From positions 19,964,001 to 20,028,000 of the forward strand of contig CM059449.1 in NCBI GenBank assembly GCA_030390025.1: a stretch of 64,000 nucleotides of DNA. The letters are read 5' to 3'. Within the stretch, counting starts at the first letter, position 1; every line of letters begins with the position of its first letter. The DNA comes from Squalus acanthias (Eukaryota). The translations under genes were made by a program, and so were the position numbers. Shown here in pieces: positions 11,539 to 35,243 of the stretch. A model generated the notes under the pieces. The model was not told the DNA's origin, made no database searches, and worked only from the letters and a program-made list of their open reading frames with translations.

Positions 11539-11611
11539 ATGTTTTTATTCCACTCACATTCCCTCACAGAGCAGTCCTGGTTAATACTGTTCCTGTTCAT
11601 CACTGACCCAG
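11539..11611 (+). CDS. CD2/SLAM-family receptor A, leader (signal peptide) exon
   Basis: Acceptor tttctctcctag|aacATG; encodes MFLFHSHSLTEQSWLILFLFITDP; phase-1 donor CCAG|gtagga; splices in frame to the V exon. Confidence 0.78.
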
Positions 11612-12342
11612 GTAGGAAAAAGTCTGCTTAATATCATTAGCACAATCATCAGAATACAACAGGGGTGAGTTACATTAAAATGTTTGTCTTGTCTGTTTAA
11701 AACAGTCAGCGATCGGGGACAAGATGTAGGTTTATTAATAAAAATTCAAGTGATTCTATCTCTATCTCAGTCTCCGTCTCCCCATATGTTGTCATAACTG
11801 TGTTAATGATCTGTTTGGGTTCTTTACTTTTTCAGTACAACAAATGGCCTTTCAGCCCATCATGCCCGTTCTATCTCGAATCCCATTTTTTTGCTCTGTC
11901 CCCATTCCTTTACACTTTTCAAATATTTTCTTCTGCCTTAAAGGTCATGACCACTTTTATACATTTATTATCTGTGTGTGTGTGTGTGCATGTACTTATG
12001 TATCTATCGTTGTTTGTGGCCTTATTTGTGTGTCTGTGTACTGATCTGTGTATCTGTTTGTCGCTCTTTTTGTACCTGCCCATGTCTCTCTGTTTATGTG
12101 TCAATGGGTCTATGTGTTAGGTAAATATTGAACTTTACATCTATTTGAATTTATTTGGGGCCAATTGATGAGAAAATTAAGACAGGTATAGGTAGAGCAA
12201 GAGTAGTACAGTTAAAGAGTGAATGGTGCCCAGTTAATTCTAGGGCAATAATGAGAGGTAAATTTGAGAGACGCCACAGACTGATTGGATGATGATTACA
12301 ATGTACAAGACCAGGAATATGGGCTGTAATCGCACTCTCCCC

Positions 12343-12790
12343 AACAACAACAACTTGTATTTATATAGTGCCTTTAACGTAGTAAGACGTCCCAAGGCGC
12401 TGCACTGGAGTATTTTAAGACAAAAAATTTGACACCGATCCACATAAGGATAAATTAGGGCAAATGACCAAAAGCTTGGTCAAAGAGATAGGTTTTAAGG
12501 AGCGTCTTAAAGGAGGAAAGAGAGGTAGCGAGGCGGACAGGTTTAGGCGGGGAATTCCAGAGCTTAGGGCCGAGGCAACAGAAGGCACGGCCACCAAAGG
12601 TTGAGCGATTATAATCAGGGATGCTCAAGAGGGCAGAATTAGAGGAGCGCAGATATCTCGGGGTGGGGGGTTGTGGGGCTGAAGGAGATTACAGAGATAG
12701 GAAGGCGCGAGGCCATGGAGGGATTTCAAAATAAGGATGAGAATTTTGAAATCGAGGCGCTGCTTAACCGGGAGCGCCAATGTAGGTCCA
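12343..12790 (-). mobile_element. L2 LINE 3' end (unit B copy ~30803-31245)
   Basis: L2 tail with (ttg)n and the usual 3' ORF sequence. Confidence 0.87.
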
Positions 12791-12812
12791 GAACCTTACC
12801 GACAGTTTGTTG

Positions 12813-12938
12813 GTCTCTGGCAAAGGTCAAAGGGATTCCGGCCCCTCGGCACCTGGTGAATGGGACTCTGGGACAGTCAGTAACTTGACCATCAATTATA
12901 TCCGAAGCCGAACCTCTGATAATTACTTGGCACTTCAG
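12813..12938 (+). pseudogene. Relic N-terminal half of an IgV exon (unit B copy ~31271-31396)
   Basis: KGIPAPRHLVNGTLGQSVT*PSIISEAEPLIITWHF aligns without gaps to VGNPVPRRLVNGTRGQSVTLPVNIPGTELESITWDF and contains an in-frame TGA. Confidence 0.82.
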
Positions 12939-13274
12939 CCCTCATCTACAGTCTCTGCAGCTCTATGAGATGTGACTCCCAATCAGGATGGAGAACAGAC
13001 TTCACAGGGCTGTTTATTAAAGAGCCCGAGGTTCTCCTTCCCATGCAATGATCCTGGGAAGGGGGAAGGTCTGAGGGGTCTTGTCAAAAGGCAGCTGCTC
13101 CCCACAAAAAGGAGCTTCACAAAATGTGCTGCACAAAGTTGGTGGAGAATATGTTCTGAAATGTTCGGCATCGGTTTAAAAAGTGCAGCAATAGATATCA
13201 CACAGTAAAACCGCAGGCACCAACACACCAGAACTAAAGGCACTAACGGGCTTGTCCTTCTGTTTCTGTTCCAG

Positions 13275-13613
13275 GTCTGGGAGAGGCTGTGGGTAATCCA
13301 GTCCCTCGACGCCTGGTGAATGGGACTCGGGGACAGTCAGTTACTTTACCAGTAAATATACCAGGAACAGAACTTGAGTCAATTACATGGGACTTCAGAA
13401 ACTTAATCACTGGGAAAAAGATTCAAGTATGTGGAAAAGTCCTAAACAAACCAGCAAAATGTAACAATGAGCTGGGAGAGAGGTTCAGGTTAATCCTCAC
13501 CGACTACAGCCTGGAAATACAGAGCCTGATAAAAAGTGACCAAGGTCTGTATGAAGTTAATGCAAGATCAGAACAAGATGTGCATGAAGAAGTGGTGGAA
13601 CTGCGAGTTTACG
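13275..13613 (+). CDS. CD2/SLAM-family receptor A, IgV exon
   Basis: tttctgttccag|...TACG|gtaatc, 339 nt, phase 1-1. Encodes VNGTRGQSVTLP...ITW...YSLEIQSLIKSDQGLYEV...ELRVY and lacks the canonical B/F-strand Cys pair, as in CD2/SLAM V domains. Confidence 0.93.
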
Positions 13614-13680
13614 GTAATCTCACTTTAATTAAAGAAGTACATTTTCTGATCTAACAATTTTTATGTAGTTAAAGATGATA

Positions 13681-13882
13681 GGGGAGATCTTCCTGGGTCT
13701 GTGCCCAAGTGCCCTGGGTCATGTGGGCGAAGTGAGTACTGGAAAATCGGACGGGTTGGAGCGCTTGCCTGTAAAGGAGCCTGCCATATTTCCCTCTATT
13801 TATATTAATGGAGGAAAATTGGGCTGGCTCCTCGAAGGGAGTGCGCTCCAACCCACCCGATTTTCTGTTGTGTGTTTGGGTC
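13681..13882. mobile_element. Hairpin MITE (~200 bp; unit B copy ~32139-32340)
   Basis: ggggagatcttcctgggtctgtgcccaa pairs with ttgggtcagacccaggaaaatcttcct; inner arms gggttggagcgc and gcgctccaaccc. Confidence 0.75.
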
Positions 13883-13927
13883 AGACCCAGGAAAATCTTC
13901 CTCGCTATTCTGAGTTTTGTTGTATGT

Positions 13928-14149
13928 ACTTCAGAAACTTAACCACTGGGAGAAAGATTCAAGTATGTAGGAAAGTCCTAAACAACCCAGCAAAATATAA
14001 CAATGAGCTGGGAGAGAGGTTCAGGTTAAACCTCAATGACTATAGCCTGGAAATACAGAGCCTGATAAAAAGTGACCAAGGTCTGTATGAGGTTAATGCA
14101 AGATCAGAACAGGACATATACGATGAAGCGGTGGAACTGCGAGTTTACG
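13928..14149 (+). pseudogene. Duplicated C-terminal half of the IgV exon with an intact donor (unit B copy 32386-32607)
   Basis: Encodes FRNLTTGRKIQVCRKVLNNPAKYNNELGERFRLNLNDYSLEIQSLIKSDQGLYEVNARSEQDIYDEAVELRVY, followed by G|gtaatc. About 91% identical to the V exon. I found no phase-1 acceptor upstream. Confidence 0.85.
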
Positions 14150-15164
14150 GTAATCACTTGTTCAGTAACGCAGGGATTCCTTGTGTCAGATTATTGCCCT
14201 CCTCCATGAATTGCGGGAGGGTAAAAGTTAGAGAATGCAAATGTCAGTGAGGAAACACTAGAAATGAGTGTGAAGTCAATTTGTAATTATTTAATTTAAC
14301 CGTTATTAATTACAGTTTTATGTTTAACAATTGGGATTACAAATCACTAATGATGCAACTCTCAGGCAGTTTCCATATTGGGGTAGTTATGGGCAATGTT
14401 CCTGCTCAGGTGCGCAGGCGTGCAGTAAACCGAATGGTCCCGCGCAGGCCGCTCACCGGCTTTTACATTGTAAAAACCACACATGCGCAGAAATTTAAAG
14501 TGACCACACAGTAAAAGAAACAGGCCGCACAGAACAAAGCGCCGCTTACAGCGAATATTGGATAGGGGATATTAACAGGCGGGAACATTGACAGCATCAT
14601 TGTAAGAACATAAGAAATAGGAGCAGGAGGAGGCCATTTGGCCCTTCGAGCCTGCTCCGCGATTCAACAAGATCACGGCTGATCTTCTACCACATCTCCA
14701 CTTTCCTGCACTATTGCGTCTACCTGTACAGTAGTTTGACAGACTGCCAGATTAATCGATCTCTGTGGTTCTTTACTCTAGAAACAGTGAGAACGGAGAG
14801 TGACTCCAAGTCGCCGGTTATTAAACAGAAATCCCACACACTCACGTGACATGAATTTGAAGTCAGGACAGAAGGGGAGCAAGATTATTATTTTGCCCCT
14901 CTATTGCCTAATTAGATTTAAACATGGGCCCTGCCTGCCTGGTCTGATGTTAAGGTGGATGTTAAAGATCCCACTAGACTATTTGAAGAAGAGCAAAGAG
15001 CTCGCGTGATATCCTGGCCAATATTTCTCCTTAAACCAACATCTCCAAAATCAGATTAACTAGTTATCTAACTCATTTGTCAGCTCCTGCTGTATCCAAA
15101 TTAGCTTCAGTGTTTACCTGCATAACAACAGTGACTGCAATTCAAAGACATTTATCTCTTTAAG

Positions 15165-15365
15165 GTCGGAGAGGAATTTCCCAGATTTTGTTCCCCCAAA
15201 ATTGGCCTGGGTTTTTAATGTTTTTTTGCCTCTCCCAGGAGATCACATGGCTTTGGATGGGGTGGAGAGTATATATTGCGATGCACAAGGTATCACAATT
15301 GTGTGGGATGGGTTGGATGGACCAGAGGGGTTTCTTCCTGTCTGGCATTGTTCGTATGTTCATAA
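15165..15365 (+). mobile_element. CR1-type LINE 3' UTR/tail fragment (also ~33625-33825, and on the minus strand at ~57540-57750)
   Basis: Shares ttttgcctctcccaggagatcacatggc...ggatggaccag...ttgttcgtatgttc with the other copies. Confidence 0.65.
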
Positions 15366-15508
15366 GTACTTTGAGACGTTTCTGGAGAGAAGTAACGAGG
15401 TGCTGGATATATGCAAAAGTTGTTATTTTAAAACCAGTTTCTTCAAAGTCTGTTCACCAAATATGTGGGCCACTGCACCGATGTTAACAAGATTTCATTC
15501 ATTTACAG

Positions 15509-15799
15509 AACGTGTATCAATTCCAAGAATACAGATCAGCGTCTCCTCTGATGGGATCTGTAATATTACCCTGAGCTGTTCAGTGGAGAGCGGCGATGAC
15601 CTGATCTACAGCTGGTGGAGAGGTGGAGGGGAGGTCACAGCTGACGGGTCACACAGTGTGACTGACGGTGGGAGGAGACTGGCAGTGTCCTTAAGTCCAC
15701 ACGATACCAGCACAGTGTACAACTGCACAGTGAGAAACCCCGTTAGTGAGAAGACTGGGAGCGTCGACCTCGCAGGCCCCTGTAACATCACCAATAAAG
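15509..15799 (+). CDS. CD2/SLAM-family receptor A, IgC2 exon
   Basis: tcatttacag|AA...AAAG|gtcatt, 291 nt, phase 1-1. Encodes ERVSIPRI...ICNITLSCSVESGDDLIYSW...YNCTVRNPVS...GPC, the 4-Cys SLAM C2 pattern with the NPVS motif. Confidence 0.93.
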
Positions 15800-16292
15800 G
15801 TCATTGTATCGGAGTTAATAGAGAGGTTACTCCAATTAATAATTAAAATGCAGGAATGGTTGTCTGATGTAATGGGAGCTGATAATAAATCTTCTTACTC
15901 GGAGGGTTAGATAAACAGCACCTTTCAAATTAGAGTTCTACCCAATTTAAACAGGTGGGGGTAGAAATTTGCCGTGGGCAGTTTTGCAAAACGGGCGACA
16001 TCACATCCGTTATAGATCCCGTTTGATACTGAGTTCAATTAAAGTCAATACATAGAATTACACAGTATTTACAGCACAGAAACAGACCATTCGGCCCAAA
16101 ACATCTACGCCGATGTTTCTGCTTCATACGAGCCTCCTCCCACCCTACTACATCTCACCCTTTCAGCATATCCTTCTATTCCTTTCGCCCTCATGTGCCT
16201 TCCCCTTGAATGCATCTACGCTATTCGCCTCAACTGCTCCATGTGGTAACGAGTTCCACATTCTCACCGCTCTCTGGGTAAAAAAAATAGAA

Positions 16293-17075
16293 ACATAGAA
16301 GATAGGAGCAAGAGTAGGCCATTCAGCCCCTCGAGCCTGCTCCGCCATTCAATGAGATCATGGCTGATCATCCAAACTCAGTACCCTGTACCTGCCTTCT
16401 CCCCATATCCCTTGATCCCTTTAGCTTTAAGAAATATATCTAATTCATTCTTGAATATATTTAATGACTTGGCCTCAACTACCTTCTGTGGTAGAGAATT
16501 CCACAGGTTCACCACTCTCTGGGTGAAGAAATTCTTCCTCATTTCTGTCCGAAATGGCTTACCCCTTATCCTTAGATTATGACCCCTGGTTCCGGACTCT
16601 CCGACCATCGGGAACATTCTTCCTGCATCTAGTTTGTCCAGACCTGTCAGAATTTTATATGTTTCGATGAGATCCGCTCTCATTCTTCTATACTCCAGCG
16701 AGTATAAGCCCAATCGACACAATCTCTCCTCATATGTCATTCCTGCCATCCCAGGTATCAGCCTGGTGAATCTACGCTGAACTCCCTCCATGGCAAGAAC
16801 ATCCTTCCTCAGATAAGGCGACCAAAACTGCACACAATACTCAAGGTGTGGTCTCACCAAGGCCCTGTACAACTGCAGCAGGACATCCTTGCTCCTGTAC
16901 TCAAACCCTTTCACTATGAAGGCCAACATACCATTTGCCTTCTTCATCGCCTGCTGCACCTGCATGCTTACCTTCAGCGACTGGTGCACAAGGACACCCA
17001 GGTCTCGTTGCACTTCCCCTTCTCCCAATCTATTGCCATTCAGATAATAGTCTGCCTTTCTGTTTTTGGCAGAAC
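16293..17075 (-). mobile_element. Young CR1 LINE 3' fragment, unit-A specific, TSD aaaatagaa
   Basis: Uninterrupted 216-aa ORF at 16378-17028 (LVRPHLEYCVQFWSPYLRKD...FFTQRVVNLWNSLP). TSD at 16284-16292 and 17076-17084; empty site at ~34750. Confidence 0.93.
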
Positions 17076-17438
17076 AAAATAGAACTGATTATTAAGCGGG
17101 TCGTGTAACGGGCCGGCAATGCTACACCACCCGATTTGGATAACCAGCCAAGATGAATTTCCACCTTGTGGTAAATGTTTCCAGGTTATTCAATGGAAAG
17201 TAACATTGGACAGGGTGTACAACAGGCAGACGATCCACTAACACCACTTTTCCACCCGACGGAGAAAGTTAAAATGACCCCCTCTTAAGAGTGTTTGTAA
17301 TAAAAACAATTATTTTAGATTTTTTTAGTAGATATATCAATATTCCACCAAATATTGCAGTAATATTAAGCTTGATTGTTGATCCCACAGCAAGGGGTTG
17401 AAAGCAGAGAGTTATTGTTTCTTTCTGTATGTTTCTAG

Positions 17439-17578
17439 GCAGTGGAAGAGATGAGGGAGACGGCACTCTGCACTCGGCTCAGATCCTGGGAATACGAGCT
17501 GCGATATTCATTGCTGCTGTCGTTACCACTATCACTGGGGTTTACATCTGGGAGCAAAGAACAGTTAAAGGAAACTGA
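17439..17578 (+). CDS. CD2/SLAM-family receptor A, stalk/TM/short-tail terminal exon (full protein 280 aa)
   Basis: tttctgtatgtttctag|GC, phase 1. Encodes GSGRDEGDGTLHSAQILGIRAAIFIAAVVTTITGVYIWEQRTVKGN*, with the TM Arg codon CGA at 17495-17497 and TGA at 17576-17578. Confidence 0.87.
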
Positions 17579-18329
17579 GAGACTGTTTACAGCTTTGTAC
17601 AGCAACAATCTAGTCTTTCAGAGGGAACTCTGGACACGGCAACAGGAGGGAAAATTAAAGTCACTGCTGAGGGTCAACGTTCAAAGACACTGACAACAGG
17701 ATTAATACAGCCACACGTCCAAGTTCATTCTTTATACTTCAGCTGTCCTTGATCACTGAGCCGGGAGACCACTTGAACCTGATTCCCACGTGTCATATCA
17801 AAAAACAATGCAGCATTGGAAGATGGAGAGCATAAAAGATCATGAAGCACGAACAAAGTTGTTCAGCCAACCCAGTCTGCTCGCTCCACAGACCCGGTAC
17901 AATCTACCCTCTCATGGTCTCTACCCGAATCCATTCCAATTGTTTTGGGAAGGTCCTGTAGTTGGTCCCTGCTTAACCATCAAACTGTCAAGTTTTTTTT
18001 CATGTTTATACCATCTGGACAGGAGCCTGTGTCAAGACGCATTGTTGGTGTATAATCTGATAATTTGTAGTTATAATTCTACAGTCAGTGAGATATGTTG
18101 TACAATATAAATTCACTGAACTTTGGACTGTGCAGGGACAAATGAGTTTGCTTTCCTCTCGGCAAAGAAGTGACAGATCATCACTGCTTGTTTAGTACAA
18201 TTTCTTACTGTTGTGTGCAGTAAATGTATTCCAGCCTTCCTGGCGAGCTGGTACCTCAGCAATAAGAAGATATTTACACTTTCACGGTTAACGCTTTACA
18301 ACTCAGAGCACGGAGTGGCCTTTAAAGAA

Positions 18330-18710
18330 AAACTTGCATTTATATAGCACCTTTCACGACCACAGGACATCCCAAAGCGCTTTGGAGCCAATGAAGTACT
18401 TTTGAAGTGTAGCCACTGTTGTAATGTAGGAAACGCGCAGCAAGATTCCAAAAACAGCCATGTGATGATAACCAGTTACTCTGTTTATTAAAGTGATGTT
18501 GGTTGAGGGGTAAATATTGGTCAGGACACCAGGGAGAACGCCCCTGCTCTTCAAAATAGTGTCATGGGATCTTTTACGCCCACTTTGAGGGGAGACGGGA
18601 CCTCGGTTTAACATCTCATCCTAGATTTTGTGCTGAAATCTCTGGAGTGGGACTTGAACCTACAACCTTCTGACCCAGAGGTGAGAGTGCTACCAGCTGA
18701 GCCACAGCCC
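18330..18710 (-). mobile_element. Deu-SINE (unit B copy ~35990-36368)
   Basis: Reverse-complement tRNA head, part of the Deu core and the L2 tail. Confidence 0.85.
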
Positions 18711-19679
18711 CAAGACTGGCTTTCACCTTTAAAAATCTGGATATTTATATCTATCTTCGAGACGAGCAAATGAAATGTTCACCTGTTGGAGTAACACTTA
18801 CAAAGTGTAACTTTCAACTGATGTTTAAGCTTAGTTTTTAAACTTAAAAACTTGCAAGTCAGTTGGCAGTGAACGGTCAGTGAGCTGTAAGTAGGTCAGC
18901 TGTTAAGTACACATTGTGTGGTTGGGGGCTGACTAATTAGTTGAGATTGGTTTGTGTCTGAAAGGTTTAGAAAGGGGGATACTTGCAAGAGCCCAGCAGT
19001 TAACTGGGAACGGAGTGAGGACTTCTAAAACGGGAATTTGATGAGAGTGGCAATTCAGTGCAGAAGGGGAGGGAGGTGCTCAGTAAATTAACCGAGGAAC
19101 AAAAGCTACGTTTTCTCCTTTTATTCACACTTTAATAAAGGGTGTCAAACTCAATTTACATGGCGGGCCAGATCAGACATCCTGGAACTTCGCATTGACA
19201 ACACTGGGGTAGAAATTGTTGTGCGTTTTGCCCATTTGTTGGGCGCAATGTATACCAATTTCTGGGCACGAGGTCCGGCACCTATTCTGCGCTGGCAGCA
19301 TGGCCATATTGGTCCTCACTGTTTTTAGGTGTCCCTGGCTGTTGCCCGAGATCAGCGGTGGATCAATTTAAATAGGAACATCGGAACAAGAGTAGGCCAT
19401 TCAGCCCCTCGATCTTGTTCCGCCATTCAATGAGATCATGGCTGATCTGTATCCCAACTCCATTCACCTGCCTTGGCTCCATATCCCTTACTACACTTGG
19501 CTAGGAAAGATTTATCGAGCTCAGATGAAAAATTATTGGCCTGGATTTTGCAGTCGGCGGCATAACTACGGATTACACGCCGGCATCTGAATGGGAACCT
19601 ACCTGATGGGGACCCTCCTCCGTGAACTTGCTGGTAGGCGCTGCGTAGTAGAGGGCAGCGTATTGGCCCACAGATCTCT

Positions 19680-20005
19680 GGGGCGTATTGCATATCCGAT
19701 GCCAGGGTAAAGGATATCTCGAAGCACAAGAAAGTAACTTGGAAAGGGAGTGGGAAGAACCAGTTGTCCTGATCCATGTCAGAAACAGCGACATGGAAAG
19801 AAAGCGAGGAGGTCGTTAAGGGAGTATCAGGAGCTCAATTAAAAAGCAGGACCTCGAGAGTGATGATCTCCGGAGTCTAAACAAGTGGTGTGACGAGTTA
19901 TGGCAGCAGTACTGGAACAGGAAGGAGCTGGGACGGGCTGCACCTGAGACCAAGATCCTCACGGAAAGGATAAACAGGACTGTAGAATGGACTTTAAACC
20001 AGCAT
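19680..20005 (+). mobile_element. CR1 ORF1 (esterase) relic with internal deletions (unit B copy ~37775-38100)
   Basis: DARVKDIS...LEREWEEPVVLIHV...GAQLKSRTS...WQQYWNRKEL...RINRTVEWTLN resembles the CR1 ORF1 SGNH-esterase C-terminus. Confidence 0.7.
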
Positions 20006-20887: not shown

Positions 20888-21185
20888 GTGCACTGTCGGA
20901 GGTGCCATCTTTCGGATGAGACATTAAACAGAGGCCCCATCTGCCCTCTCAGGTAGGTGTAAAAGATCCCATGACACTATTTCAAAGAAGAGCAGGGGAG
21001 ATCGCCCCCCAGTGTCCTGGCTAATATTTATCTGTCATCCAACATTACTACAAAAAAGATTATCTGCCACGTTTCCTACATAAAAGTGACTATACTTCAA
21101 AAGTACTTCATTGGCTGTAAAACGCTTTGGGACGTTGTGACGTCGCGGAAGGCGCTATATAAATGCAAGTTCCTTCTTTTCTTTT
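20888..21185 (+). mobile_element. 5'-truncated Deu-SINE (unit B copy ~38980-39330, with an internal ~53-bp tandem duplication)
   Basis: Deu core plus L2 tail. Confidence 0.85.
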
Positions 21186-22268: not shown

Positions 22269-22334
22269 TACTATTATTATGCCCATGTACAAACAGATAC
22301 AGGGCAATAGGAGTCAACTCACACAAAAGTAAAA

Positions 22335-24780: not shown

Positions 24781-27402
24781 AGTGGTTCTACAGTATTTAT
24801 GTATCATTGCTACATTTTCAACAACTACTTGTATTTATAAAGCACCTTTCATGTCGTAAAACGTCCCAAGGCGTTTCACAGGTGCGTTATCAAACAAAAT
24901 TTGACACCATGCCACATAAGGAGATATTAGGACAGGTGACTAAAAGCTTGGTCAAAGAGGTAGAGAGGCGGAGAGGTTTAGGGAGGGACTTCCGGAGATT
25001 TAGGCCTAGGCAGCTGAAGGCACAGCCGCCAATGGTGGGGCGATGAAAATCGGGGATGTGCAAGAGGCCAGAATTGGAGGAGCGCAGAGATTTCAGATGG
25101 TTCGAGGACAGGAGGAGGTTACAGGGATAGGGAGGGGCGACAACATGGAGGGAGTGGAAGACAAGGAATAAAATGTTAAAACTGAGGCATTGCCAGACCG
25201 GGAGCCAATGTAAGGCAGCGAGCATAGGGGTGATGTAAGAAGGGACTTGGTGCAATTTAGGATCAGGGCAGCAGAATTTTGGATGAGCTCAAGCTTATGA
25301 AGGGTGGAAGATAGGAGGCCAGCCAGGAGAGCATTGGAATAGTGAAGTCTAGAGGTAACAAAGGCGTAGATGATGGTTTCAGCAGCAGATGAGCTGAAGC
25401 AGGAGCGGAGACGGGTGGTGATGGAGCAGAAACGTGGTCGGAAGGTCCTCTCGGGGTCAAATAGGACGCCAAGGTTCCAAACGGTCTGAATCAGCCTCAG
25501 ACAGTGGCCAGGAAGAGGGATGGAGTCGATGGTTAGGTAACGGAGTTTGGGGCAGGGACCGAAGACAATGGCTTCGGTCTTCCCAGTATTTAGTCGGAGG
25601 AAGTTTCTGCTGGTCGAACAAGCAGCGTGACAAATCAGAGACAGTGGAGGAGTCGAGAGTGGTGGTGATTCACAATGCACGATGGGGACGCAGACCTCAG
25701 AACTGCCCAACCCAAAGAGAGGAACGCCAACCATAAAGAAATTTATCTATGCAACTTTCTATCTTTGAGATAATGGGAAGGATCACAGAGGTCAATCACT
25801 TATAGCCGGAGGCTTCTCATTCACTGTGCCCAGTAGGGCTTAGCTGGGCAGACGTTTCCATATCTCAGGCTCCTACATCAAAAATGAGATGACTCAATCA
25901 GAGTGGTAAATCCGATTGATGGCTTGGCGGACTAAACTCCACAATCTTAAAGGGAGTTTTATTCTCTCTCTTTTACAGGAACAGCAACATGACAGTAAAC
26001 ACAGAACCAGTCTGGATCAACTAGCTTGAAAGTTAGTTTCCACTCACAATGTCAATAGAGAGTGCGTTTTTGTTATTTTTCATGACACGAGGAGTGGTAA
26101 GAAATTGAGAGGTCTCACTGTGAACAGTACTCTGCTCGTTCACAGATTTCATGTAAAATAACCCCGTTTATTGGTTTTCAATTGTGCCTCGTTTTGCTGG
26201 AGTGCTTTTCAGTCTGCCTTCCATAAAACAAAACCATTTCAACAACATCCTACAACAGAGTGGAGATATGGCCAATTTAAAGAGCCGGGTTCTTGCAGGG
26301 TTTATTTTTAGTGCAAAAATCCAGGAGAAAACCAGTGGCGAAAACCGGACCTCCCAAAAAAGCCCAGGTAAATTTGGGAAGTAAGGGTCTCAAAAATATA
26401 GTCAAGCTGATTGACAACTATTATTTACACAATTCAGTGACACCACTTTTATGCAGCTCACCATCTGACTTCCACTTAACCCGTAGATAGATTTTTTTTC
26501 AAACTAAAAGTAAAATTGAGGAATCTATGTTTACAGCTGTGCCTCCAGTTAACTATGATGGTGGGATGTTAAAAATTGTTGGAGATTATGCAGAGCGGAA
26601 TAGTTGCAATCTTGCTTTCAGTAAACGGTGCCTTTGGTGTGTGCCCGGTGTCAGCCTTTGATCGGTGACCTGAGGCTTGAAGGGACTAGTATTTATGCTA
26701 CCTAGCAGTACACTGCTGTTCTTGCTCCATGCTTGACTAGGAATGAAAGACTGACATTTCATGCAGCATAAAGAATAGTCCTCACAGCAACTTGTAACGT
26801 TCATCGAGGTCCCCTTAAAAACATCAAATTGCACAGCCTTCCATTTGTTTTCCTGCTGAAAATTGGACCCAGAGATGCACGTGCATCACATCACTGTGCA
26901 CGCTGCCTGACACAGACAGCATGCGGTGTGCACACGTGAACAGGAGTGGGCCATTCAGCCCCCTCGAGCCTGCTCCGCCAATCAATGGCTCATCTGTGCC
27001 TCATCTCCACTGTCCCGCCTCAGCGCCATGTCCCTTGACAGTTGACACCCTTACAAACTGAGCGATTTGTGCATATTTCTACATCTAATTTTTAGCAAAA
27101 TAGAAGACGGGGAGAAATTTCGGTTTGTTTTTCCCCAACAGGAAGTCAGTTTTTACAGATCCTAAAAAATAACTGAGAATTTATCAGTGGAAGTCGGTAA
27201 AAGTCCCTAAATATTGGCCATGACACCAGAAGTGTTCCATCCACGACTTCAAATGGTGCCATTACATCTTTAATATCCACCTGAACCCTCAGGGCCTCAG
27301 TGTAGCATCTCATCAAAGGACGATGTACAGTACAGCACTAGACCTAGAGTATAAGCACAAGTCCAGGAGCTGGCTTTCTCTAACTCACAAGGATCACTAT
27401 AG

Positions 27403-27884
27403 GAAGGACGTGGAAGCATTGGAAAGAGTGCAAAGGAGATTTACCAGGATGCTGCCTGGTTTGGGGGGGAGGTCTTATGAGGAAAGATTGAGGGAGTTAG
27501 GGCTTTTCTCTTTAGAGCGGAGGAGGATGAGAGGCGACTTAATAGAGGTTTATAAGATGATGAGGGGGATAGATAGAGTGGATGTTCAGAGACTATTTCC
27601 TCGGGTGGAGGTAGCTGTTACAAGGGGGCATAACTATAAGGTGCATGGGGGGAGATATAGAAGGGATGTCCGAGGTAGATTCTTTACTCAGAGAGTGGTT
27701 GGGGTGTGGAATGGACTGCCTGCTGTGATAGTGGAGTCGGACACTTTAGGAACTTTCAAGCGGTTATTGGATAAGCACATGGAGCACACCAGAATGATAG
27801 GGAGTGGGATAGCTTGATCTTGGTTTCGGACAATGCTCGGCACAACATCGAGGGCCGAAGGGCCTGTACTGTTCTATGTTCTAT
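27403..27884 (+). mobile_element. Young CR1 LINE 3' fragment, unit-B specific
   Basis: Encodes RKDVEALERVQRRFTRMLPGL...FFTQRVVGVWNGLP, with a (ttctatg)n tail. TSD gatcactatag / gatcacgatag at 27392-27402 and 27885-27895; empty site at ~9421. Confidence 0.93.
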
Positions 27885-30003
27885 GATCACGATAGAATCA
27901 GTAACAGGCGACGTGCTCTAGTTTAAAATAACTAACAGCGAGGTGGATGTGGGTTGAGGTCCCCATTCTGCACCTCAGTAGCCTGTTGAGAGTTAAGCTC
28001 TCGTGCAAATGGCCAAACATGTAGAAAGCCAACCAGCTCACTGACCATTTCAAGGAATAGATAAGGAAACAGGTTTAGTCTGAAATATTCTGCTGTATCT
28101 CATATTCTATTGAGAAATGCCGTTTACAGAAGTAAAAACAAAAGGAAGGGCTCGTGCTGCTGAGCTGCGGCTCTCGGTGAATGTTGGGTGACGCTAACTC
28201 TGGTGACCATCACCGATTATCTTGACTGTGGCTTCTCCTTTAACTGCTTGCACAAGCTGCAGGAAATGACCAGCTTCAACCCACCCATCTGCTGCTGATC
28301 AGTGCAGTAAATAGTTACCAAGTATAGTGAGAGAAACACAGACCAGATGGGCTGTGATGGATTTCCAGTGAAACCAGATCAACGCCCAGAGGATGCGGTG
28401 CTGGATCTGATCGGGGTCATATTGTGAAGGCTCCTGTTCAGTACAACGTGATTTCCGAGCTCACCCTGTCTGGAGAGACCGGATGATCCCTGTGTACTTG
28501 ATGTGCATCGAGGTGTCTGATCATCTTCCAACACAGCTGCACCCCTTGTAAACTTGGAGCCATTGGGTAAGACCTTATTGTAGTCTCTTTGTTTGAATCT
28601 GTTGAGAAGAACAGTTTCCATTTGAGTTCAAGTATCTCTTGTCACTGATGAATAGAGTCCATGTCACTTTAAAGTGAATTCGGCCTTTCTCTCTTCCTTC
28701 TCATGAGTTGAATTATTCCTGGTCGTGGTTTAACAATGAGAATTCCACTATCAGTTCAGGTCGCTGCTTCTGGTGGGGAAACCTCCCTCTTACTAGCTCC
28801 TAATGTTTGCTTTTCAACTCTTTAAGGTCATTTTAATCTAACTCGCCAGGCAGGATACCCACGGGATCGGGGTAACACTGGTTTTAAACCCAGCCCAATA
28901 TTACTCTCCACTGACGTCGAATATCGGTGGCCATCAAATACCACCTCATCCAATCTTCCGGTTAACATGGGCGTTTGGTAAAAATAAAATCAGACAGTAC
29001 ATGTGCACCAGTCCAATTACACACAGCTCAAAGGGGAATGCACAATTCCCCCTTCGGAGGAACGAGGGATGATTGCAGCAATCGGGAGCTCCCGGGCAGG
29101 GTGGGCAATACAGCCCATAATATTGCAATCATTAAAAATTGGAAATTGGACGGAAAATCCTGAGTTACTGCCCCACGAGTTTCTGTTCTGTGCTCCCAGC
29201 CATCACCGACCCTGGCTGCGAGTGAGCAGTCAATGTACACGAACCAGCCAATCGGCTCTGACATCAGACACTATTTCAACAGTAAGTTGGAGGAAATGTT
29301 CGCTACAGGCCCTACCGAGGCACTCCACCAATAAACTGAACCACAACCAATTGTTTTATACTAAATCCTTTCTATCCAATACATTAAATGTGATTAATTT
29401 TTTGACATTTCATGTCTGATTTCTTCACACCCAGGAGATTTATTAAACTGTCTATTGGACTGTGGGAGACCCGTGGTTTCTCAGTCCCTTGTGTCAGCTG
29501 TGGCTCAGTTGGTAGCACACTCGCCTGAGTCAGAAGTTTCTGGGGTCAAGTCCCACTCCAGAGATTTCAGCACAAAAATCTAGGCAGACACTCCAGTGCA
29601 GTGCTAAGGGAGTGCTGCATTGTCGGAGGTGCCGTCTTTCGGATGAGACGTTAAAACGAGGTCCCGTCTGCTCTCAGGTGGACGCAAAAGATCCCATGGC
29701 ACTATTTCAAAAAAGAGCAGGGGAGGTATCCCCGGTGTCCTGGCCAATATTTATCCCTCGATCAACATAACAAAACAGATTATTTGGTCATTATCACATT
29801 GCTGTTTGTGGGAGCTTGCTGTACACAAATTGGCTGCCGTGTTTCCCACATTACAAGAGACTACACTTCAAAAAGTACTTCATTATCTGTAAAGCGCTTT
29901 GAGACGTCTGGTGGTCGTGAAAGGCGCTATATAAATGCAAGTCTATCTTTCTTTCTTCCTCTGATCTCTCACTGATGAGCTTATGTCGTTTCTCTCCTAG
30001 AAC

Positions 30004-30076
30004 ATGTTTTTGTTCCACTCACATTCCCTCACAGAGCAGTCCTGGTTAATACTGTTCCTATTCATCACTGACCCAG
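30004..30076 (+). CDS. CD2/SLAM-family receptor B, leader exon
   Basis: Same acceptor, ATG and donor as receptor A; encodes MFLFHSHSLTEQSWLILFLFITDP. Confidence 0.78.
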
Positions 30077-31732
30077 GTAGGAAAATCTCTGCTTAATATC
30101 ATTAGCACAATTATCAGAATACAACAGGGGTGAGTTACATTAAAATGTTTGTCTTGTCTGTTTAAAACAGTCAGCGATCGGGGGCAAGATGTAGGTTTAT
30201 TAATAAAAATTCAAGCGATTCTATCTCTATCTCAGTCTCCGTCTCCCCATATGTTGTTGTAACTGTGTTAATGATCTGTTTGTCTTTACTTTTTCAGTAC
30301 AACAGATGGCCTTTCAGCCCATCATGCCCGTTCTATCTCGAATCCCATTTTTTTGCTCTGTCCCCATTCCTTTACACTTTTCAAATGTTTACTTCTGCCT
30401 TAAAGGTCATGACCACTTTTATACATTTATTATCTGTGTGTGTGTGTGCATGTACTTATGTATCTATCGTTGTTTGTGGCCTTATTCGTGTGTCTGTGTA
30501 CTGATCTGTGTATCTGTTTGTCGCTCTTTTTGTACCTGCCCATGTCTCTCTGTTTATGTGTCAATGGGTATATATGTTAGGTAAATATTGAACTTTACAT
30601 CTATTTGAATTTATTTGGGGCCAATTGATGAGAAAATTAAGACAGATATAGGTAGAGCAAGAGTAGTACAGTTAAAGAGTGAATGGTGCCCAGTTAGTTC
30701 TAGGGCAATAATGAGAGGTCAGTTTGGGAGATGTCACAGACTGATTGGATGATGATTACAATGTACAAGACCAGGAATATGGGCTGTAATCGCACTCTCC
30801 CCAACAACAACAACTTGTATTTATATAGCGCCTTTAATGTAGTAAAACATCCCAAGGCGCTGCACAGGAGTATTTCAAGACAAAAAATTTGACACCGAGC
30901 CACATAAGGATAAATTAGGGCAGATGACCAAAAGTTTGGTCAAAGAGATAGGTTTTAAGGAGCGTCTTAAAGGAGGAAAGAGAGGTAGCGAGGCGGACAG
31001 GTTTAGGCGGGGAATTCCAGAGCTTAGGGCCTAGGCAACAGGAGGCACGGCCACCAAAGGTTGAGCGATTATAATCAGGGATGCTCAAGAGGGCAGAATT
31101 ATAGGAGCGCAGATATCTCGGGGTGGGGGGTTGTGGGGCTGAAGGAGATTACAGAGATAGGAAGGGGCGAGGCCATGGAGGGATTTCAAAACAAGGATGA
31201 GAAGTTTGAAATCGAGGTGCTGCTTAACCGGGAGCCAATGTAGGTCCAGAACCTTACCGACAGTTTGTTGGTCTCTGGCAAAGGTTAAAGGGATTCCGGC
31301 CCCTCGGCACCTGGTGAATAGGACTCTGGGACAGTCAGTAACTTGACCATCAATTATATCCGAAGCCGAACCTCTGATAATTACTTGGCACTTCTGCCCT
31401 CATCTACAGTCTCTGCAGCTCTATGAGATGTGACTCCCAATCAGGATGGAGAACAGACTTCACAGGGCTGTTTATTAAAGAGCCCGAGGTTCTCCTTCCC
31501 ATGCAATGATCCTGGGAAGGGGGAATGTCTGAGGGGTCTTGTCAAAAGGCAGCTGCTCCCCACAAAAAGGAGCTTCACAAAATGTGCTGCACAAAGTTAG
31601 TGGAGAATATGTTCTGAAATGTTCGGCATCGGTTTAAAAACCACAGCAATAGATATCACACGGTAAAACCGCAGACACCAACACACCAGAACTAAAGACA
31701 CTAATGGGCTTGTCCTTCTGTTTCTGTTCCAG

Positions 31733-32071
31733 GTCTGGGAGAGGCTGTTCGTAATCCAGTCCCTCGACGCCTGGTGAATGGGACTCTGGGACAGTCAGTT
31801 ACTTTACCAGTAAATATACCAGGAACAGAACTTGAGACAATTACCTGGGACTTCAGAAACTTAATCACTGGGAAAAAGATTCAAGTATGTAGGAGATTAC
31901 TAAAGAACCCAGCAGTCTGTGAAAGTGAGCTGGGAGACAGGTTCAGGTTAAACCTCACCGACTACAGCCTGGAAATACAGAGCCTGATAAAAAGTGACCA
32001 AGGTCTGTATGAAGTTAATGCAAGATTAGGACAAGGTGTGCATGAAGAAGTGGTGGAACTACGAGTTTACG
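31733..32071 (+). CDS. CD2/SLAM-family receptor B, IgV exon
   Basis: 339 nt, phase 1-1; encodes VNGTLGQSVTLP...VCRRLLKNPAVCESELGDRF...ARLGQGVHEEVVELRVY. Confidence 0.93.
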
Positions 32072-33970
32072 GTAATCTCACTTTAATTAAAGTAGTACAT
32101 TTTCTGATCTAACAATTTTTATGTAGTTAAAGATGATAGGGGAGATCTTCCTGGATCTGTGCCCAAGTGGCCTGGGTCATGTGGGCGAAGTGAGTACTGG
32201 AAAATCGGACGGGTTGGAGCGCTTGCCTGTAAAGGAACCTGCCATATTTTCCTCTATTTATATTAATGGAGGAAAATTGGGCTGGCTCCTCCAAGGGAGT
32301 GCGCTCCAACCCACCCGATTTTCTGTTATGTGTTTGGGTCAGACCCAGGAAAATCTTCCTCGCTATTCTGAGTTTTATTGTATGTACTTCAGAAACTTAA
32401 TCACTGGGAGAAAGATTCAAGTATGTAGGAAAGTCCTAAACAACCCAGCAAAATATAACAATGAGCTGGGAGAGAGGTTCAGGTTAAACCTCAATGACTA
32501 TAGCCTGGAAATACAGAGCCTGATAAAAAGTGACCAAGGTCTGTATGAGGTTAATGCAAGATCAGAACAGGACATATACGATGAAGCGGTGGAACTGCGA
32601 GTTTACGGTAATCACTTGTTCAGTAACGCAGGGATTCCTTGTGTTAGATTATTGCCCTCCTCCATGAATTGCGGGAGGGTAAAAGTTACAGAGAATGCAA
32701 ATGTCAGTGAGGAAACACTAGAAATGAGTGTGAAGTCAATTTGTAATTATTTAATTTAACCGTTATTAATTACAGTTTTATGTTTAACAATTGGGATTAC
32801 AAATCACTAACGATGCAACTCTCAGGCAGTTTCCATATTGGGGTAGTTATGGGCAATGTTCCTGCTGAGGTGCGCGGGCGCGCAGTAATCCGAAAGGTCC
32901 CGCGCAGGCCGCTCAACGGCTTCTGCATTGTAAAAACCGCGCATGCGCAGAAATTTAAAGTGACCACACATTAAAAGAAACAGGCCGCACAAAACAAAGC
33001 GCAGCTTACAGCGAACATTGGATAGGGGATATTTACAGGCGGGAACATTGACAACATCATTGTAAGAACATAAGAAATAGGAGCAGGAGTAGGCCATTTG
33101 GCCCTTCGAGCCTGCTCCGCCATTCAACAAGATCACGATTGATCTTCTACCACATCTCCACTTTCCTGCACTATTGTGTCTATCTGTACAGTAGTTTGAC
33201 AGACTGTCAGATTAATCGATCTCTGTGGTTCTTTACTGTTGAAACAGTGAGAACGGAGAGCGACTCCAAGTCACAGTTTGTTAAACAGAAATCCCACACA
33301 CTCACGTGATATGAATTTGAAGTCAGGACAGAAGGGGAGCAAGATTATTATTTTGCCCCTCTATTGCCTAATTAGATTTAAACATGGGCCCTGCCTGCCT
33401 GTCTGATGTGGTGTTAAGGTGGATGTTAAAGATCCCACGAGACTATTTGAAGAAGAGCAAAGAGCTCGCGTGATATCCTGGCCAATATTTCTCCTTAAAC
33501 CAACATCTCCAAAATCAGATTAACTAGTTATCTAACTCATTTGTCAGCTCCTGCTATATCCAAATTAGCTTCAGTGTTTACCTGCATAACAACAGTGACT
33601 GCACTTCAAAGACATTTATCTCTTTGGGGTCGGAGAGGAATTTCCCCGATTTTGTTCCCCCAAAATTGGCCTGGGTTTTTAATGTTTTTTTGCCTCTCCC
33701 AGGAGATCACATGGCTTTGGGTGGGGTGGAGAATATATATTGCGATGCACAAGGTATCACAATTGTGTGGGATGGGTTGGATGGACCAGAGGGTTTTTTC
33801 GGTCTGGCATTGTTCGTATGTTCATAAGTACTTTGAGACGTTTCTGGAGAGAAGTAACGAGGTGCTGGATATATGCAAAAGTTGTTATTTTAAAACCAGT
33901 TTCTTCAAAGTCTGTTCACCAAAAATGTGGGCCACTACACCAATGTTAACAAGATTTAATTCATTTACAG

Positions 33971-34264
33971 AACGTGCGTCAAGTCCTACAATACAGATCA
34001 GCGACGTGTCCTCTGATGGTATCTGTAATGTTACCCTGAGCTGTTCAGTGGAGAGCGGCGATGACCTGATCTACAGCTGGTGGAGAGAAGGAGGGGAGGT
34101 CACAGCTGACGGGTCACACAGTGTGACTGACAGTGGGAGGAGACTGGCAGTGTCCTTAAGCCCACACGATACCAGCACAGTGTACAACTGCACAGTGAGA
34201 AACCCTGTTAGTGAGGAGACTGGGAGCGTCGACATCGCAGGCCCCTGTAACATCACCAATAAAG
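33971..34264 (+). CDS. CD2/SLAM-family receptor B, IgC2 exon
   Basis: 294 nt, phase 1-1; encodes ERASSPTIQISDVSSDGICNVTLSC...YNCTVRNPVS...GPCNITNK. Confidence 0.93.
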
Positions 34265-35103
34265 GTTATTGTATCGGAGTTAATAGAGAGGTTACTCCAA
34301 TTAATAATTAAAATGCAGGAATGGTTGTCTGATGTAATGGGAGCTGATAATAAATCTTCTTACTTGGAGGGTTAGATTAACAGCACCTTTCAAATTAGAG
34401 TTCTACCCAATTTAAACAGGTGGGGGTAGAAATTCGCCGTGGGCAGTTTTGCAAAACGGGCGACATCACATCCGTTATAGATCCCGTTTGATACTGAGTT
34501 CAATTAAAGTCAATACATAGAATTACACAGTATTTACAGCACAGAAACAGACCATTCGGCCCAAAACATCTACGCCGATGTTTCTGCTTCATACGAGCCT
34601 CCTCCCACCCTACTACATCCCACCCTTTCAGCATATCCTTCCATTCCTTTCTCCCTCATGTGCCTTCCCCTTGAATGCATCTACGCTATTCGCCTCAACT
34701 GCTCCATGTGGTAACGAGTTCCACATTCTCACCGCCCTCTGGGTAAATAAAATAGAACTGATTATTAAGCGGGGCATGTAACGGGCCGGCAATGACATAC
34801 CGCCCGATTTGGCCAAGATGAATTTCCACCTTGTGGTAAATGTTCCCAGGTTATTCAATGGAAAGTAACATTGGACAGTGTGTACAACAGGCAGACGATC
34901 CACTACCGCCACTTTTCCAGCCGACGGAGAAAGTTAAAATGACCCCCTCTTAAGAGTGTTTGTAATGAAAACAATTATGATAGATTTTTTTAGTAGATAT
35001 AGCAATATTACAACAAATATTGCAGTAATATTAAGCTTGATTGTTGATCCCACAGCAAGGGGTTGAAAGCAGAGAGTTATTGTTTCTTTCTGTATGTTTC
35101 TAG

Positions 35104-35243
35104 GCAGTGAAAGAGAGAAGGGAGACGGCACTTTGCACTCGGCTCGGATCCTGGGAATACGAGCTGCGATATTCATTGCTGCTGTCGTTACCACTATCAC
35201 TGGGGTTTACATCTGGGAGCAAAGAACAGTTAAAGGAAACTGA
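35104..35243 (+). CDS. CD2/SLAM-family receptor B, TM/short-tail terminal exon (full protein 281 aa)
   Basis: Encodes GSEREKGDGTLHSARILGIRAAIFIAAVVTTITGVYIWEQRTVKGN*, with the TM Arg at 35160-35162. Confidence 0.87.

What the first reader, a model, noticed from the sequence alone, without database searches (positions are those of the whole stretch)
11539..35243. Two CD2/SLAM-family receptors with a transmembrane arginine and no signalling tail: predicted FcRgamma-coupled activating SLAM-like receptors in a shark
Seen in the sequence: both genes splice cleanly (all phase 1) into leader-IgV-IgC2-TM proteins of 280 and 281 aa. The TM is ILGIRAAIFIAAVVTTITGVYIW, with Arg near its extracellular end, followed only by EQRTVKGN and a stop, so there is no cytoplasmic Tyr, ITSM or ITIM. 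The TM and tail are identical in both copies although the ectodomains diverge. Established: mammalian SLAMs signal through ITSM with SAP/EAT-2, while an N-proximal TM Arg with a short tail marks FcRgamma/CD3zeta-associated activating receptors (LILRA, NKp46, FcalphaRI, GPVI, OSCAR). From memory, FcRgamma-type TMs also occur in the expanded amphibian CD2/SLAM family. Inference: these are activating members of a paired-receptor system built on the SLAM scaffold in cartilaginous fish. The ORF track misses this because it translates the TM exon in another frame.
Basis: partly seen in the sequence, partly recalled or inferred. Interest (0 to 1): 0.85.

Follow-up and report, generated by a model that had tools for sequence, protein, structure and literature searches.

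The report
Shark SLAM-like receptors with arginine anchor
Two neighbouring shark genes encode SLAM-like immune receptors with a charged arginine in the membrane anchor and almost no inner tail, probably the activating partners of inhibitory SLAM-like receptors.

Summary
An 18.4-kb unit is duplicated in tandem. Each copy carries a four-exon, all-phase-1 gene for leader, IgV, IgC2 and TM, of 280 and 281 aa. The TM is ILGIRAAIFIAAVVTTITGVYIW, followed by EQRTVKGN and a stop.

The V-to-C2 splice appears in public run contigs. Other contigs read through the stop into the 3'UTR. The C2-to-TM junction was not among the rows shown.

The same leader, ILGIR-type TM and short tail recur in four other sharks. 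The TM core also occurs in an elephant shark protein. Partner proteins in sharks, rays and the elephant shark have ordinary TMs and long tails with an xQYAxI motif plus a TIYDEI ITSM.

Leader and TM follow the receptor type, but V domains group by lineage. That is the mosaic expected of paired receptors.

The paired, activating reading is therefore supported. The specific FcRgamma claim is not. The NxxR motif is absent, a 2014 screen found no shark FcRgamma (PMC4016189), and cd247 is expressed in bamboo shark T cells (PMC11372145). No adaptor was tested here.

First-stage notes on other pieces of this genome describe similar genes (s1-889056); I did not check them. I file this as a new member of a known kind.

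The parts
5631..23677 (.). Tandem duplication unit 1, which holds gene A
   Evidence: Self-BLASTN gives colinear blocks at 93-98% identity with unit 2. Non-coding divergence around the genes is 225 of 8230, or 2.73%.
23701..41892 (.). Tandem duplication unit 2, which holds gene B
11539..11611 (+). Gene A exon 1: start codon and leader MFLFHSHSLTEQSWLILFLFITDP, ending in phase 1
   Evidence: Sequence and donor CAG|gtagg. Matches the N-termini of Arg-type proteins from other sharks at 16 of 24 (P0004, P0005) and 14 of 24 (P0009), against 2-6 of 24 for long-tail proteins.
13275..13613 (+). Gene A exon 2: IgV domain without the canonical disulfide
   Evidence: Pfam V-set E 8.6e-9. PDB sequence search: SLAMF6 2if7 E 4.7e-4 and CD84 2pkd E 8.6e-3. 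AF2 model pLDDT 89.2. Best fold match is 2B4, 2ptt_B, E 1.4e-8.
15509..15799 (+). Gene A exon 3: IgC2 domain with four Cys
   Evidence: Pfam Ig_3 E 3.9e-7. Four Cys are invariant in 23 aligned sequences. AF2 model pLDDT 86.8.
17439..17578 (+). Gene A exon 4: stalk, TM, 8-aa tail and stop. The TM is 17483-17551 and the Arg codon CGA is 17495-17497.
   Evidence: Translation. Kyte-Doolittle maximum of 1.96 over ILGIR...TITG. No usable internal donor.
30004..30076 (+). Gene B exon 1: leader with the same protein sequence as in gene A
   Evidence: There are 2 nt differences, both synonymous.
31733..32071 (+). Gene B exon 2: IgV domain
   Evidence: Differs from gene A at 16 of 112 aa. In run X4 a 740-nt contig covers 31732-32071. 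In run X3 a joint 32070>33970 with GT..AG ends is seen at depth 65.9.
33971..34264 (+). Gene B exon 3: IgC2 domain, one codon longer than in gene A
   Evidence: Spliced contigs in runs X3 and X4.
35104..35243 (+). Gene B exon 4: stalk, TM (35148-35216), tail and stop. The Arg codon is 35160-35162.
   Evidence: Contigs 35147-35302 (X1) and 35148-35479 (X3) run through the stop colinear with the genome.
35244..35677 (+). Gene B 3'UTR, minimum extent
   Evidence: Contigs 35148-35479 (X3) and 35252-35677 (X2). ATTAAA lies at 35319 and 36147, AATAAA at 36793.

Best explanation
Each of the two tandem duplicates encodes a type-I membrane protein of the CD2/SLAM family. It has a ligand-binding IgV domain, an IgC2 domain, a short stalk, a TM helix with an Arg five residues into the hydrophobic stretch, and an 8-residue tail with no tyrosine.

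Shown: the genes are intact. At least the V-to-C2 splice and the read-through into the 3'UTR are seen in RNA-like contigs. The leader plus Arg-TM plus short-tail module is conserved in distant sharks, and its TM core also in an elephant shark protein. The same animals carry sister receptors with ordinary TMs and ITIM-like plus ITSM tails. V domains stay similar to those sisters within each lineage.

Inferred: the Arg pairs in the membrane with the twin Asp of a disulfide-linked signalling dimer of the zeta/gamma family. CD3zeta is the only one documented in sharks in the papers I saw. That pairing would be needed for export from the ER and would turn ligand binding into an ITAM signal. The genes would then be the activating half of a paired system whose inhibitory or switch half signals through ITIM/ITSM. 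Because SLAM receptors usually bind one another, the shared V domains suggest that both halves see the same SLAM-like ligand. The fast change on the C'-C'' and FG face between the two copies suggests ongoing diversification of that recognition.
For: - Gene structure and TM.
- Expression: X3 has the joint 32070>33970 with GT..AG ends at depth 65.9. X4 has a 740-nt contig holding the V and C2 exons. X1, X2 and X3 have contigs through the stop to 35677.
- Family.
- Conserved module: the Arg-TM pattern matched 5 of 45 proteins scanned (P0004 S. canicula, P0005 S. torazame, P0006 Mustelus asterias, P0009 Hemiscyllium ocellatum, P0020 Callorhinchus milii). Against the four shark proteins the window's TM plus tail is identical at 17-20 of 31 positions. 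It is 13 of 31 against Callorhinchus and 3-11 of 31 against long-tail types. The leader is 14-16 of 24 against 2-6 of 24.
- Partners: TIYDEI is found in 9 of the 45 tails and TVYNEI in 1.
- Mosaic evolution: in the V tree the Arg and long types pair within lineages, with support 100/100, 100/99, 99/96 and 100/97. Holding the Arg-type V domains as one clade costs 367 lnL, p-AU 0.0011. For C2 the p-AU is 0.022.
- Rule for the Arg position: CD89 binds the FcRgamma dimer through an Arg near the top of its TM. NKp30 and NKp46 use zeta or gamma. DAP12 partners use a central Lys (passages in PMC13107469).
- cd247 is expressed in bamboo shark T cells (passages in PMC11372145).
Against: - No adaptor was examined, so activation is pure inference.
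- The NxxR motif is absent in all 7 sequences.
- FcRgamma was reported as not found in sharks (passage in PMC4016189; 2014, older genomes).
- The Arg is residue 5 of 23. A 19-residue helix could begin at the Arg (Kyte-Doolittle 1.65), which would leave it at the interface rather than buried.
- The Callorhinchus protein P0020 has the ILGIRA TM but a roughly 50-residue tail with SVYENV, so the module is not always tail-less.
- The C2-to-TM junction was not seen in the rows shown.
- The runs are only guessed to be RNA, and they also hold intron sequence.
- The long-tail partner of this species is not in the window.
Confidence: 0.58

Rival explanations
1. The proteins are tail-less ligands or decoys, working like CD48 or SLAMF8/9. 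They sit on the surface unaided and serve only as binding partners for the ITSM-bearing SLAM-like receptors on other cells. The Arg snorkels at the outer membrane interface and needs no partner.
For: NCBI's pipeline names the relatives 'SLAM family member 9-like'. The Arg lies only five residues into the hydrophobic stretch, and a 19-residue helix can start at it. V domains kept alike with the long-tail type are also what a dedicated ligand would show. No adaptor has been shown.
Against: An outer-side Arg and the surrounding ILGIRA.IF core are conserved from sharks to Callorhinchus. The long-tail type never has this Arg. A mere anchor should drift. The conserved, type-specific leader and RTVK(G/E)N tail also point to a constrained module.
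Confidence: 0.25
2. The C-terminal hydrophobic stretch is a GPI-attachment signal that is cut off, giving a GPI-anchored protein as with CD48 or CD58.
For: The tail is very short, and small residues (G, S, D) lie in the stalk just before the hydrophobic stretch. GPI-linked members exist in the mammalian family (recalled).
Against: The removed part of a GPI signal is normally poorly conserved. Here both the TM core and the charged 8-residue tail are conserved across sharks. No GPI predictor was available, so this was not formally tested.
Confidence: 0.07
3. One or both copies are young, decaying duplicates without function. The RNA contigs come from other paralogues.
For: Only 15 of the 40 listed read differences match copy A, and the rest match neither copy. 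Other paralogues or alleles are therefore being read. Half-exon relics show that the locus is turbulent.
Against: Both reading frames and all splice sites are intact. Non-synonymous change in V runs above the neutral rate rather than showing frame decay. Contigs nearly identical to copy B cover its exon 4 and 3'UTR, with 1 other letter in 156 and 2 in 332.
Confidence: 0.07

Closest known systems
Xenopus CD2/SLAM-family members with NxxR transmembrane segments (Guselnikov et al. 2011, seen only as cited in a passage of PMC4536121)
   Same: A SLAM-type ectodomain is joined to an Arg-bearing TM and a short tail. These are predicted activating members beside ITSM-bearing ones in an expanded family.
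   Different: The shark TM lacks the Asn of NxxR and reads (Q/H/V)IL(G/V)IR. The shark module is conserved across cartilaginous fishes. The 2011 paper itself is not held in the library, so finer comparison was not possible.
Mammalian SLAM-family receptors SLAMF6/NTB-A, CD84 and 2B4
   Same: The V domain lacks the canonical disulfide and has the VNG.LG.SVTLP start. These are the best sequence matches and 2B4 is the best fold match. There is a C2 domain with four Cys. The shark partner genes carry the ITSM TIYDEI.
   Different: The window genes have no cytoplasmic ITSM at all and carry a TM Arg. To my knowledge (recalled) no mammalian SLAMF member has that combination.
Arg-TM receptors that assemble with FcRgamma or zeta dimers: CD89, NKp46, NKp30
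   Same: The Arg lies in the top part of the TM and the tail is short with no signalling motif (passages in PMC13107469).
   Different: The ectodomain family is unrelated. The NxxR motif of the LRC-type TM is absent. No assembly data exist.
SLAMF8, SLAMF9 and CD48: family members without an ITSM
   Same: Two-domain SLAM ectodomain without a signalling tail. NCBI names the shark relatives 'SLAM family member 9-like'.
   Different: Those names are automatic. A conserved TM Arg and a partner gene with matched V domains are not features I know for SLAMF8, SLAMF9 or CD48 (recalled).

Membership tests
CD2/SLAM family | N-terminal V-set domain lacking the canonical B-F disulfide | tested here: met
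   Pfam V-set E 8.6e-9. In the alignments to SLAMF6 and CD84 the B-strand position is Pro (SVTLPVN) and the F strand reads YEV without Cys. The only invariant Cys in the V domain is C52, in the C' strand.
CD2/SLAM family | Membrane-proximal C2 domain with four conserved Cys | tested here: met
   C17, C23, C72 and C91 are invariant in 23 sequences. The disulfide pairing itself was not tested.
CD2/SLAM family | Closest sequence and fold relatives are SLAM-family proteins | tested here: met
   For the V domain, SLAMF6 and CD84 rank first by sequence, and 2B4 ranks first by fold with CD48, NTB-A, SLAM and CD2 also listed. For C2 taken alone the result is inconclusive: CEACAM, NCAM and titin rank above NTB-A.
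CD2/SLAM family | ITSM (TxYxxV/I) in the cytoplasmic tail, as in the SAP-binding members | tested here: not met
   The tail is EQRTVKGN with no Tyr. The motif is present in the long-tail relatives of other species: TIYDEI in 9 and TVYNEI in 1 of 45 proteins scanned.
CD2/SLAM family | Position in the SLAM gene cluster | not testable with these tools
A figure legend in PMC10751288 places slamf in the white shark MHC region.
NxxR-type FcRgamma-coupled transmembrane receptors | Asn three residues before the TM Arg | tested here: not met
   The residue is Leu at that position in window A and B and in P0004, P0005, P0006, P0009 and P0020, so 0 of 7 carry Asn. The motif definition comes from a passage in PMC4536121.
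NxxR-type FcRgamma-coupled transmembrane receptors | Basic residue in the N-terminal part of the TM, and a short tail without motifs | tested here: met
   The Arg is residue 5 of 23 and the tail is 8 aa. The exception among relatives is P0020, whose tail has SVYENV.
NxxR-type FcRgamma-coupled transmembrane receptors | Surface expression and signalling depend on the adaptor | not testable with these tools
   This needs co-expression experiments.
Paired activating/inhibitory receptors | Closely related ectodomains joined to opposite signalling modules in one genome | tested here: met
   Shown in other species. S. canicula P0004 (Arg) groups with P0070 (long). Callorhinchus P0020 groups with P0061. 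The V trees place them as nearest kin. For the window's own genome the long-tail partner lies outside the window, so it was not shown there.
Paired activating/inhibitory receptors | Genetic linkage of the two types | tested here: inconclusive
   The two types sit on contigs of equal length, and therefore probably the same chromosome, in three species: 163,470,629 for P0004 and P0070, 140,552,254 for P0006 and P0071, and 74,466,956 for P0003 and P0012. The distances between them are unknown.
GPI-anchored CD48/CD58-like members | C-terminal hydrophobic signal that is removed, with no conserved tail | tested here: inconclusive
   The conserved TM core and RTVK(G/E)N tail argue against it. No GPI predictor was run.

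The most novel reading that the evidence does not exclude
An activating SLAM lineage with its own non-NxxR Arg TM arose before sharks and chimaeras split. It couples to a zeta-type dimer in animals where FcRgamma has been reported missing. Its V domain is repeatedly copied from, or to, the ITSM-bearing sister so that activating and inhibitory SLAMs keep recognising the same SLAM-like self ligand. That would make it a paired system for self-recognition rather than for MHC or pathogens, later lost in mammals.
Probability: 0.3. Interest if true: 0.7.

Novelty: new member of a known kind. Interest (0 to 1): 0.5.

Why it matters
Mammalian SLAM receptors signal only through their own ITSM tails. Adaptor-coupled SLAMs have been described only in frogs.

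A conserved Arg-TM SLAM type in sharks and an elephant shark would put paired activating and inhibitory SLAM receptors at the base of jawed vertebrates. It would imply later loss in the mammalian line. It would also give a concrete receptor for asking which ITAM chains early vertebrates used.

The lineage-wise matching of V domains offers a natural test of how self-binding receptor pairs co-evolve.

Tried and rejected
- TM exon against solved structures. Only two chance-level hits, PsaM at E 1.2 and the DAP12-NKG2C TM construct at E 2.6. No weight given.
- TM exon in the ESM Atlas. Best score 0.88, unnamed clusters, recognition below the useful level. No lead.
- Word-index search with the TM region of P0009. 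It found only itself, among 3 candidates.
- A weak leader-like match at 62093-62161. It has no ATG and no donor, so I rejected it.
- Search for ITSM or long-tail exons in the window. None were found.
- C2 fold search. It returned generic Ig folds and does not discriminate.
- Literature. Ten searches found no paper describing Arg-TM SLAM-like receptors in cartilaginous fish. The library lacks most subscription journals, and Guselnikov 2011 is not held. Supplements were not opened and could hold gene lists that bear on novelty, for example those of PMC10751288 or PMC11372145.
- First-stage notes searched by the words FcRgamma, DAP12 and ITAM. These gave only further predictions and no adaptor gene.
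- 'TM identical between copies' as evidence of constraint. Rejected, because P = 0.07 by chance.

Full report
**What is in the sequence.**
A self-comparison shows two tandem copies of an 18.4-kb unit, about 5631-23677 and 23701-41892, at 93-98% identity. Each copy holds one four-exon gene on the + strand.

- Gene A: 11539-11611, 13275-13613, 15509-15799, 17439-17578.
- Gene B: 30004-30076, 31733-32071, 33971-34264, 35104-35243.

All introns are GT..AG and all junctions are phase 1. The coding lengths are 843 and 846 nt, giving 280 and 281 aa. The window has no N.

Exon 4 reads a stalk, then ILGIRAAIFIAAVVTTITGVYIW, then EQRTVKGN and a stop, in both copies. Each exon was searched by itself, and full-length natural relatives served for the whole.

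**Is exon 4 really the last exon?**
No GT inside it before the stop resembles a donor on my crude position matrix. These score -3.2 to -8.8, against +0.6 to +4.5 for the six real donors. tblastn with four long-tail shark proteins found their V and C2 parts in the window but nothing for their TM or tails.

**Read evidence.**
Eight public runs hold parts of the stretch. All are only guessed to be RNA and are kept as contigs. Four runs were laid on 29900-35800.

- X3 has a 393-nt contig at depth 65.9 with a joint 32070>33970 and GT..AG ends. This is the V-to-C2 splice.
- X4 has a 740-nt contig covering 31732-32071 and 34009-34256. In that contig, 35 other letters replace the first 38 nt of the C2 exon.
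- Contigs 35147-35302 (X1), 35148-35479 (X3) and 35252-35677 (X2) pass through the stop colinear with the genome. The 3'UTR is therefore at least 434 nt.

The joint 34264>35104 was not among the 15 joints listed, and 23 more were not shown. Intron contigs are present too, at depths of about 3-15. One X2 contig crosses the intron 3/exon 4 border unspliced. The runs therefore hold unspliced RNA or some DNA as well.

Of the 40 listed letter differences, 15 equal copy A and 25 equal neither copy. Copy A or further paralogues or alleles are also being read.

**Family.**

| Test | V exon | C2 exon |
|---|---|---|
| Pfam | V-set, E 8.6e-9 | Ig_3, E 3.9e-7 |
| Solved structures by sequence | SLAMF6 E 4.7e-4, CD84 E 8.6e-3 | CEA and CEACAM1 first, SLAMF6 at E 0.14 |
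| AF2 model | pLDDT 89.2 | pLDDT 86.8 |
| Fold search | 2B4 first (E 1.4e-8, TM 0.80-0.85); CD48, NTB-A, SLAM and CD2 also listed among general IgV folds | Generic Ig folds |

The V domain has Pro and Val where the canonical Cys pair would sit. The C2 domain has four invariant Cys.

**Relatives.**
Three searches were run.

- The C2 exon inside its unspliced open frame, scored on the exon only: 9 hits at E 0.001 or better among 81 candidates.
- The V exon against all cluster representatives: 51 hits at E 0.001 or better, 14 at 1e-10 or better, 4 at 1e-30 or better.
- A profile of 11 relatives: 27 hits at E 1e-10 or better among 6350 candidates.

These returned proteins of sharks, rays and the elephant shark, auto-named SLAM-like, 'SLAM family member 9-like' or '5-like'. 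The best identity to the window is 77-80%, to Heptranchias and Pristiophorus. The window's own species is therefore not among them.

**Two receptor types.**
I scanned the C-termini of 45 of these proteins.

- Five carry the Arg TM: P0004 (S. canicula, 283 aa), P0005 (S. torazame), P0006 (Mustelus asterias), P0009 (Hemiscyllium ocellatum, 278 aa) and P0020 (Callorhinchus milii).
- P0004, P0005 and P0009 end 8 residues after the TM with RTVKEN or ITVKGN. P0006 ends EQNS.
- P0004 and P0009 align with the window's four exons from the first Met to the last residue.
- P0020 differs. It has a V domain only, then VILGIRAVVFVASLL, then a tail of about 50 residues with SVYENV.
- P0012 (Heterodontus) ends in a string that looks like the TM exon read in the wrong frame. 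That is my inference, and I labelled it accordingly.
- The long-tail type has an uncharged TM and a tail with xQYAxI. It then carries TIYDEI in 9 of the 45 proteins, or TVYNEI in 1.

**Mosaic evolution.**
Identity of the window's gene A modules to other proteins:

| Module | Arg-type sharks | Long-tail proteins | Other |
|---|---|---|---|
| Leader | 14-16 of 24 | 2-6 of 24 | |
| TM plus tail | 17-20 of 31 | 3-11 of 31 | 13 of 31 to Callorhinchus P0020 |
| V | 62-70 of 112 (galeomorph sharks) | 78-87 of 112 (the two squalomorph long-tail proteins); 67-76 of 112 (galeomorph sharks) | |

- V tree: 22 rows. P0005 and P0006 were dropped for partial V domains.
- In it the Arg and long types are nearest kin within Callorhinchus (100/100), Heterodontus (100/99), hemiscylliids (99/96) and Scyliorhinus (100/97).
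- Forcing the 6 Arg-type rows into one clade costs 367 lnL, p-AU 0.0011.
- The TM type changes 5 times on that tree. Leri_short was not counted.
- C2 tree: 23 rows. P0020 was dropped because it has no C2 domain.
- In it the carcharhiniform Arg-type C2s do form a group (98/98). The window's C2s sit with the squalomorph long types (93/88).
- One Arg clade is rejected at p-AU 0.022.

I defined the groups by TM motif, but I ran the tests after seeing the trees. Both tests include the inferred P0012 row. I did not repeat them without it.

The pattern is a type-specific leader and TM with lineage-specific ectodomains. That is what repeated exchange between paired receptor genes gives.

**The two copies compared.**

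| Region | Differences | Note |
|---|---|---|
| Non-coding DNA | 225 of 8230 (2.73%) | baseline |
| V exon | 24 of 339 | P = 2.8e-5 against the non-coding rate |
| C2 exon | 15 of 291 | P = 0.015 |
| Exon 4 | 5 of 140 | all in the first 44 nt |

In the V exon pN is 0.074 and pS is 0.062. The ratio of 1.2 is not significantly above 1, but the non-synonymous rate exceeds the non-coding rate (P = 1e-4).

Eleven of the 16 V replacements lie at residues 53-64 and 98-101. In the model these are the end of strand C', the C'-C'' stretch and the FG turn. From established structures of this family (recalled: 2B4-CD48 and NTB-A) that is the ligand face.

The identity of the TM and tail between the two copies is not in itself remarkable (P = 0.07).

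**How it most likely works.**
Passages of a 2026 review (PMC13107469) give the assembly rules.

- CD89 binds the FcRgamma dimer through an Arg near the top of its TM and needs both Asp residues.
- NKp30 and NKp46 use zeta or zeta-gamma on the same basis.
- All DAP12 partners have a central Lys.
- Unassembled chains are held back in the ER.

The shark Arg is residue 5 of a 23-residue stretch. This fits the zeta/gamma rule and not the DAP12 rule.

The shark TM has Leu where NxxR has Asn, in 7 of 7 sequences.

A passage of PMC4016189 (2014) reports that no FcRgamma homologue was found in sharks. Passages of PMC11372145 use cd247 as a T-cell marker in bamboo shark.

I therefore read these genes as adaptor-coupled activating SLAM-like receptors. 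A zeta-family dimer is the best candidate partner. I treat 'FcRgamma' as unproven. Nothing here tests the coupling.

**Rivals.**
The rivals are a tail-less ligand or decoy with an interfacial Arg, a GPI-anchored form, and decaying duplicates. Their weights and the evidence are given in the Rival explanations section.

**Novelty.**
Relatives are already in public databases under automatic names. A figure legend of PMC10751288 places slamf genes in the white shark MHC region. Ten full-text searches found no description of an Arg-TM SLAM type or of SLAM paired receptors in cartilaginous fish. Subscription journals and supplements were not seen.

First-stage notes on other pieces of this genome report similar genes (s1-889056). 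I did not check them. The finding is a new member of a known kind, namely paired, adaptor-type IgSF receptors on a SLAM scaffold as in frogs. It has its own TM motif and deep conservation.

Noticed in passing
window 12817-12936 and 13930-14148; also 31275-31394 and 32388-32606: Each V exon lies between two relics. Upstream is a 5' half-exon with an in-frame stop. Downstream is a 3' half-exon (V residues 40-112, 85-86% identical to gene A's V exon) that keeps its donor site. In run X3 a contig at depth 82.8 goes from 31861 to 32401 at nearly homologous places. It is probably a further expressed paralogue whose 3' half resembles the relic.
   Followed up: partly
window 13275-13613 versus 31733-32071: Replacement changes between the two V exons exceed the non-coding rate (19 in 255.5 sites against 2.73%, P = 1e-4). 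They cluster at residues 53-64 and 98-101 of the exon, which hold 11 of the 16 changes.
   Followed up: partly
window 16293-17072: A 780-bp insertion in intron 3 of gene A only, carrying most of a 216-aa minus-strand ORF (16378-17028). Pfam gave no match. A similar ORF lies at 27323-27817. From recall it looks like a retroelement reverse-transcriptase tail.
   Followed up: partly
window 56470-57150, minus strand: A 226-aa ORF with a CCHC zinc knuckle (Pfam zf-CCHC, E 2.7e-7) and a Tyr/Gly/Ala-rich tail ending in AQYS repeats. From recall it resembles RBM4.
   Followed up: partly
window 23642-24514 and 5620-6039: ORFs rich in Cys and His (CNTCPF...CTSCNLVYCIHCSRCGLLYIRETKRRLGDRFAEH) sit at the junction of the two duplication units. 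Pfam gave no match. They may be a mobile-element endonuclease domain (recalled resemblance only).
   Followed up: no
proteins P0080 and P0081 (skates): Skates have another short-tail form. Its TM starts with SSRVLITAATIIF and its Tyr-free tail is KRTSSAQGN.... It may be a separate solution to the same role.
   Followed up: no
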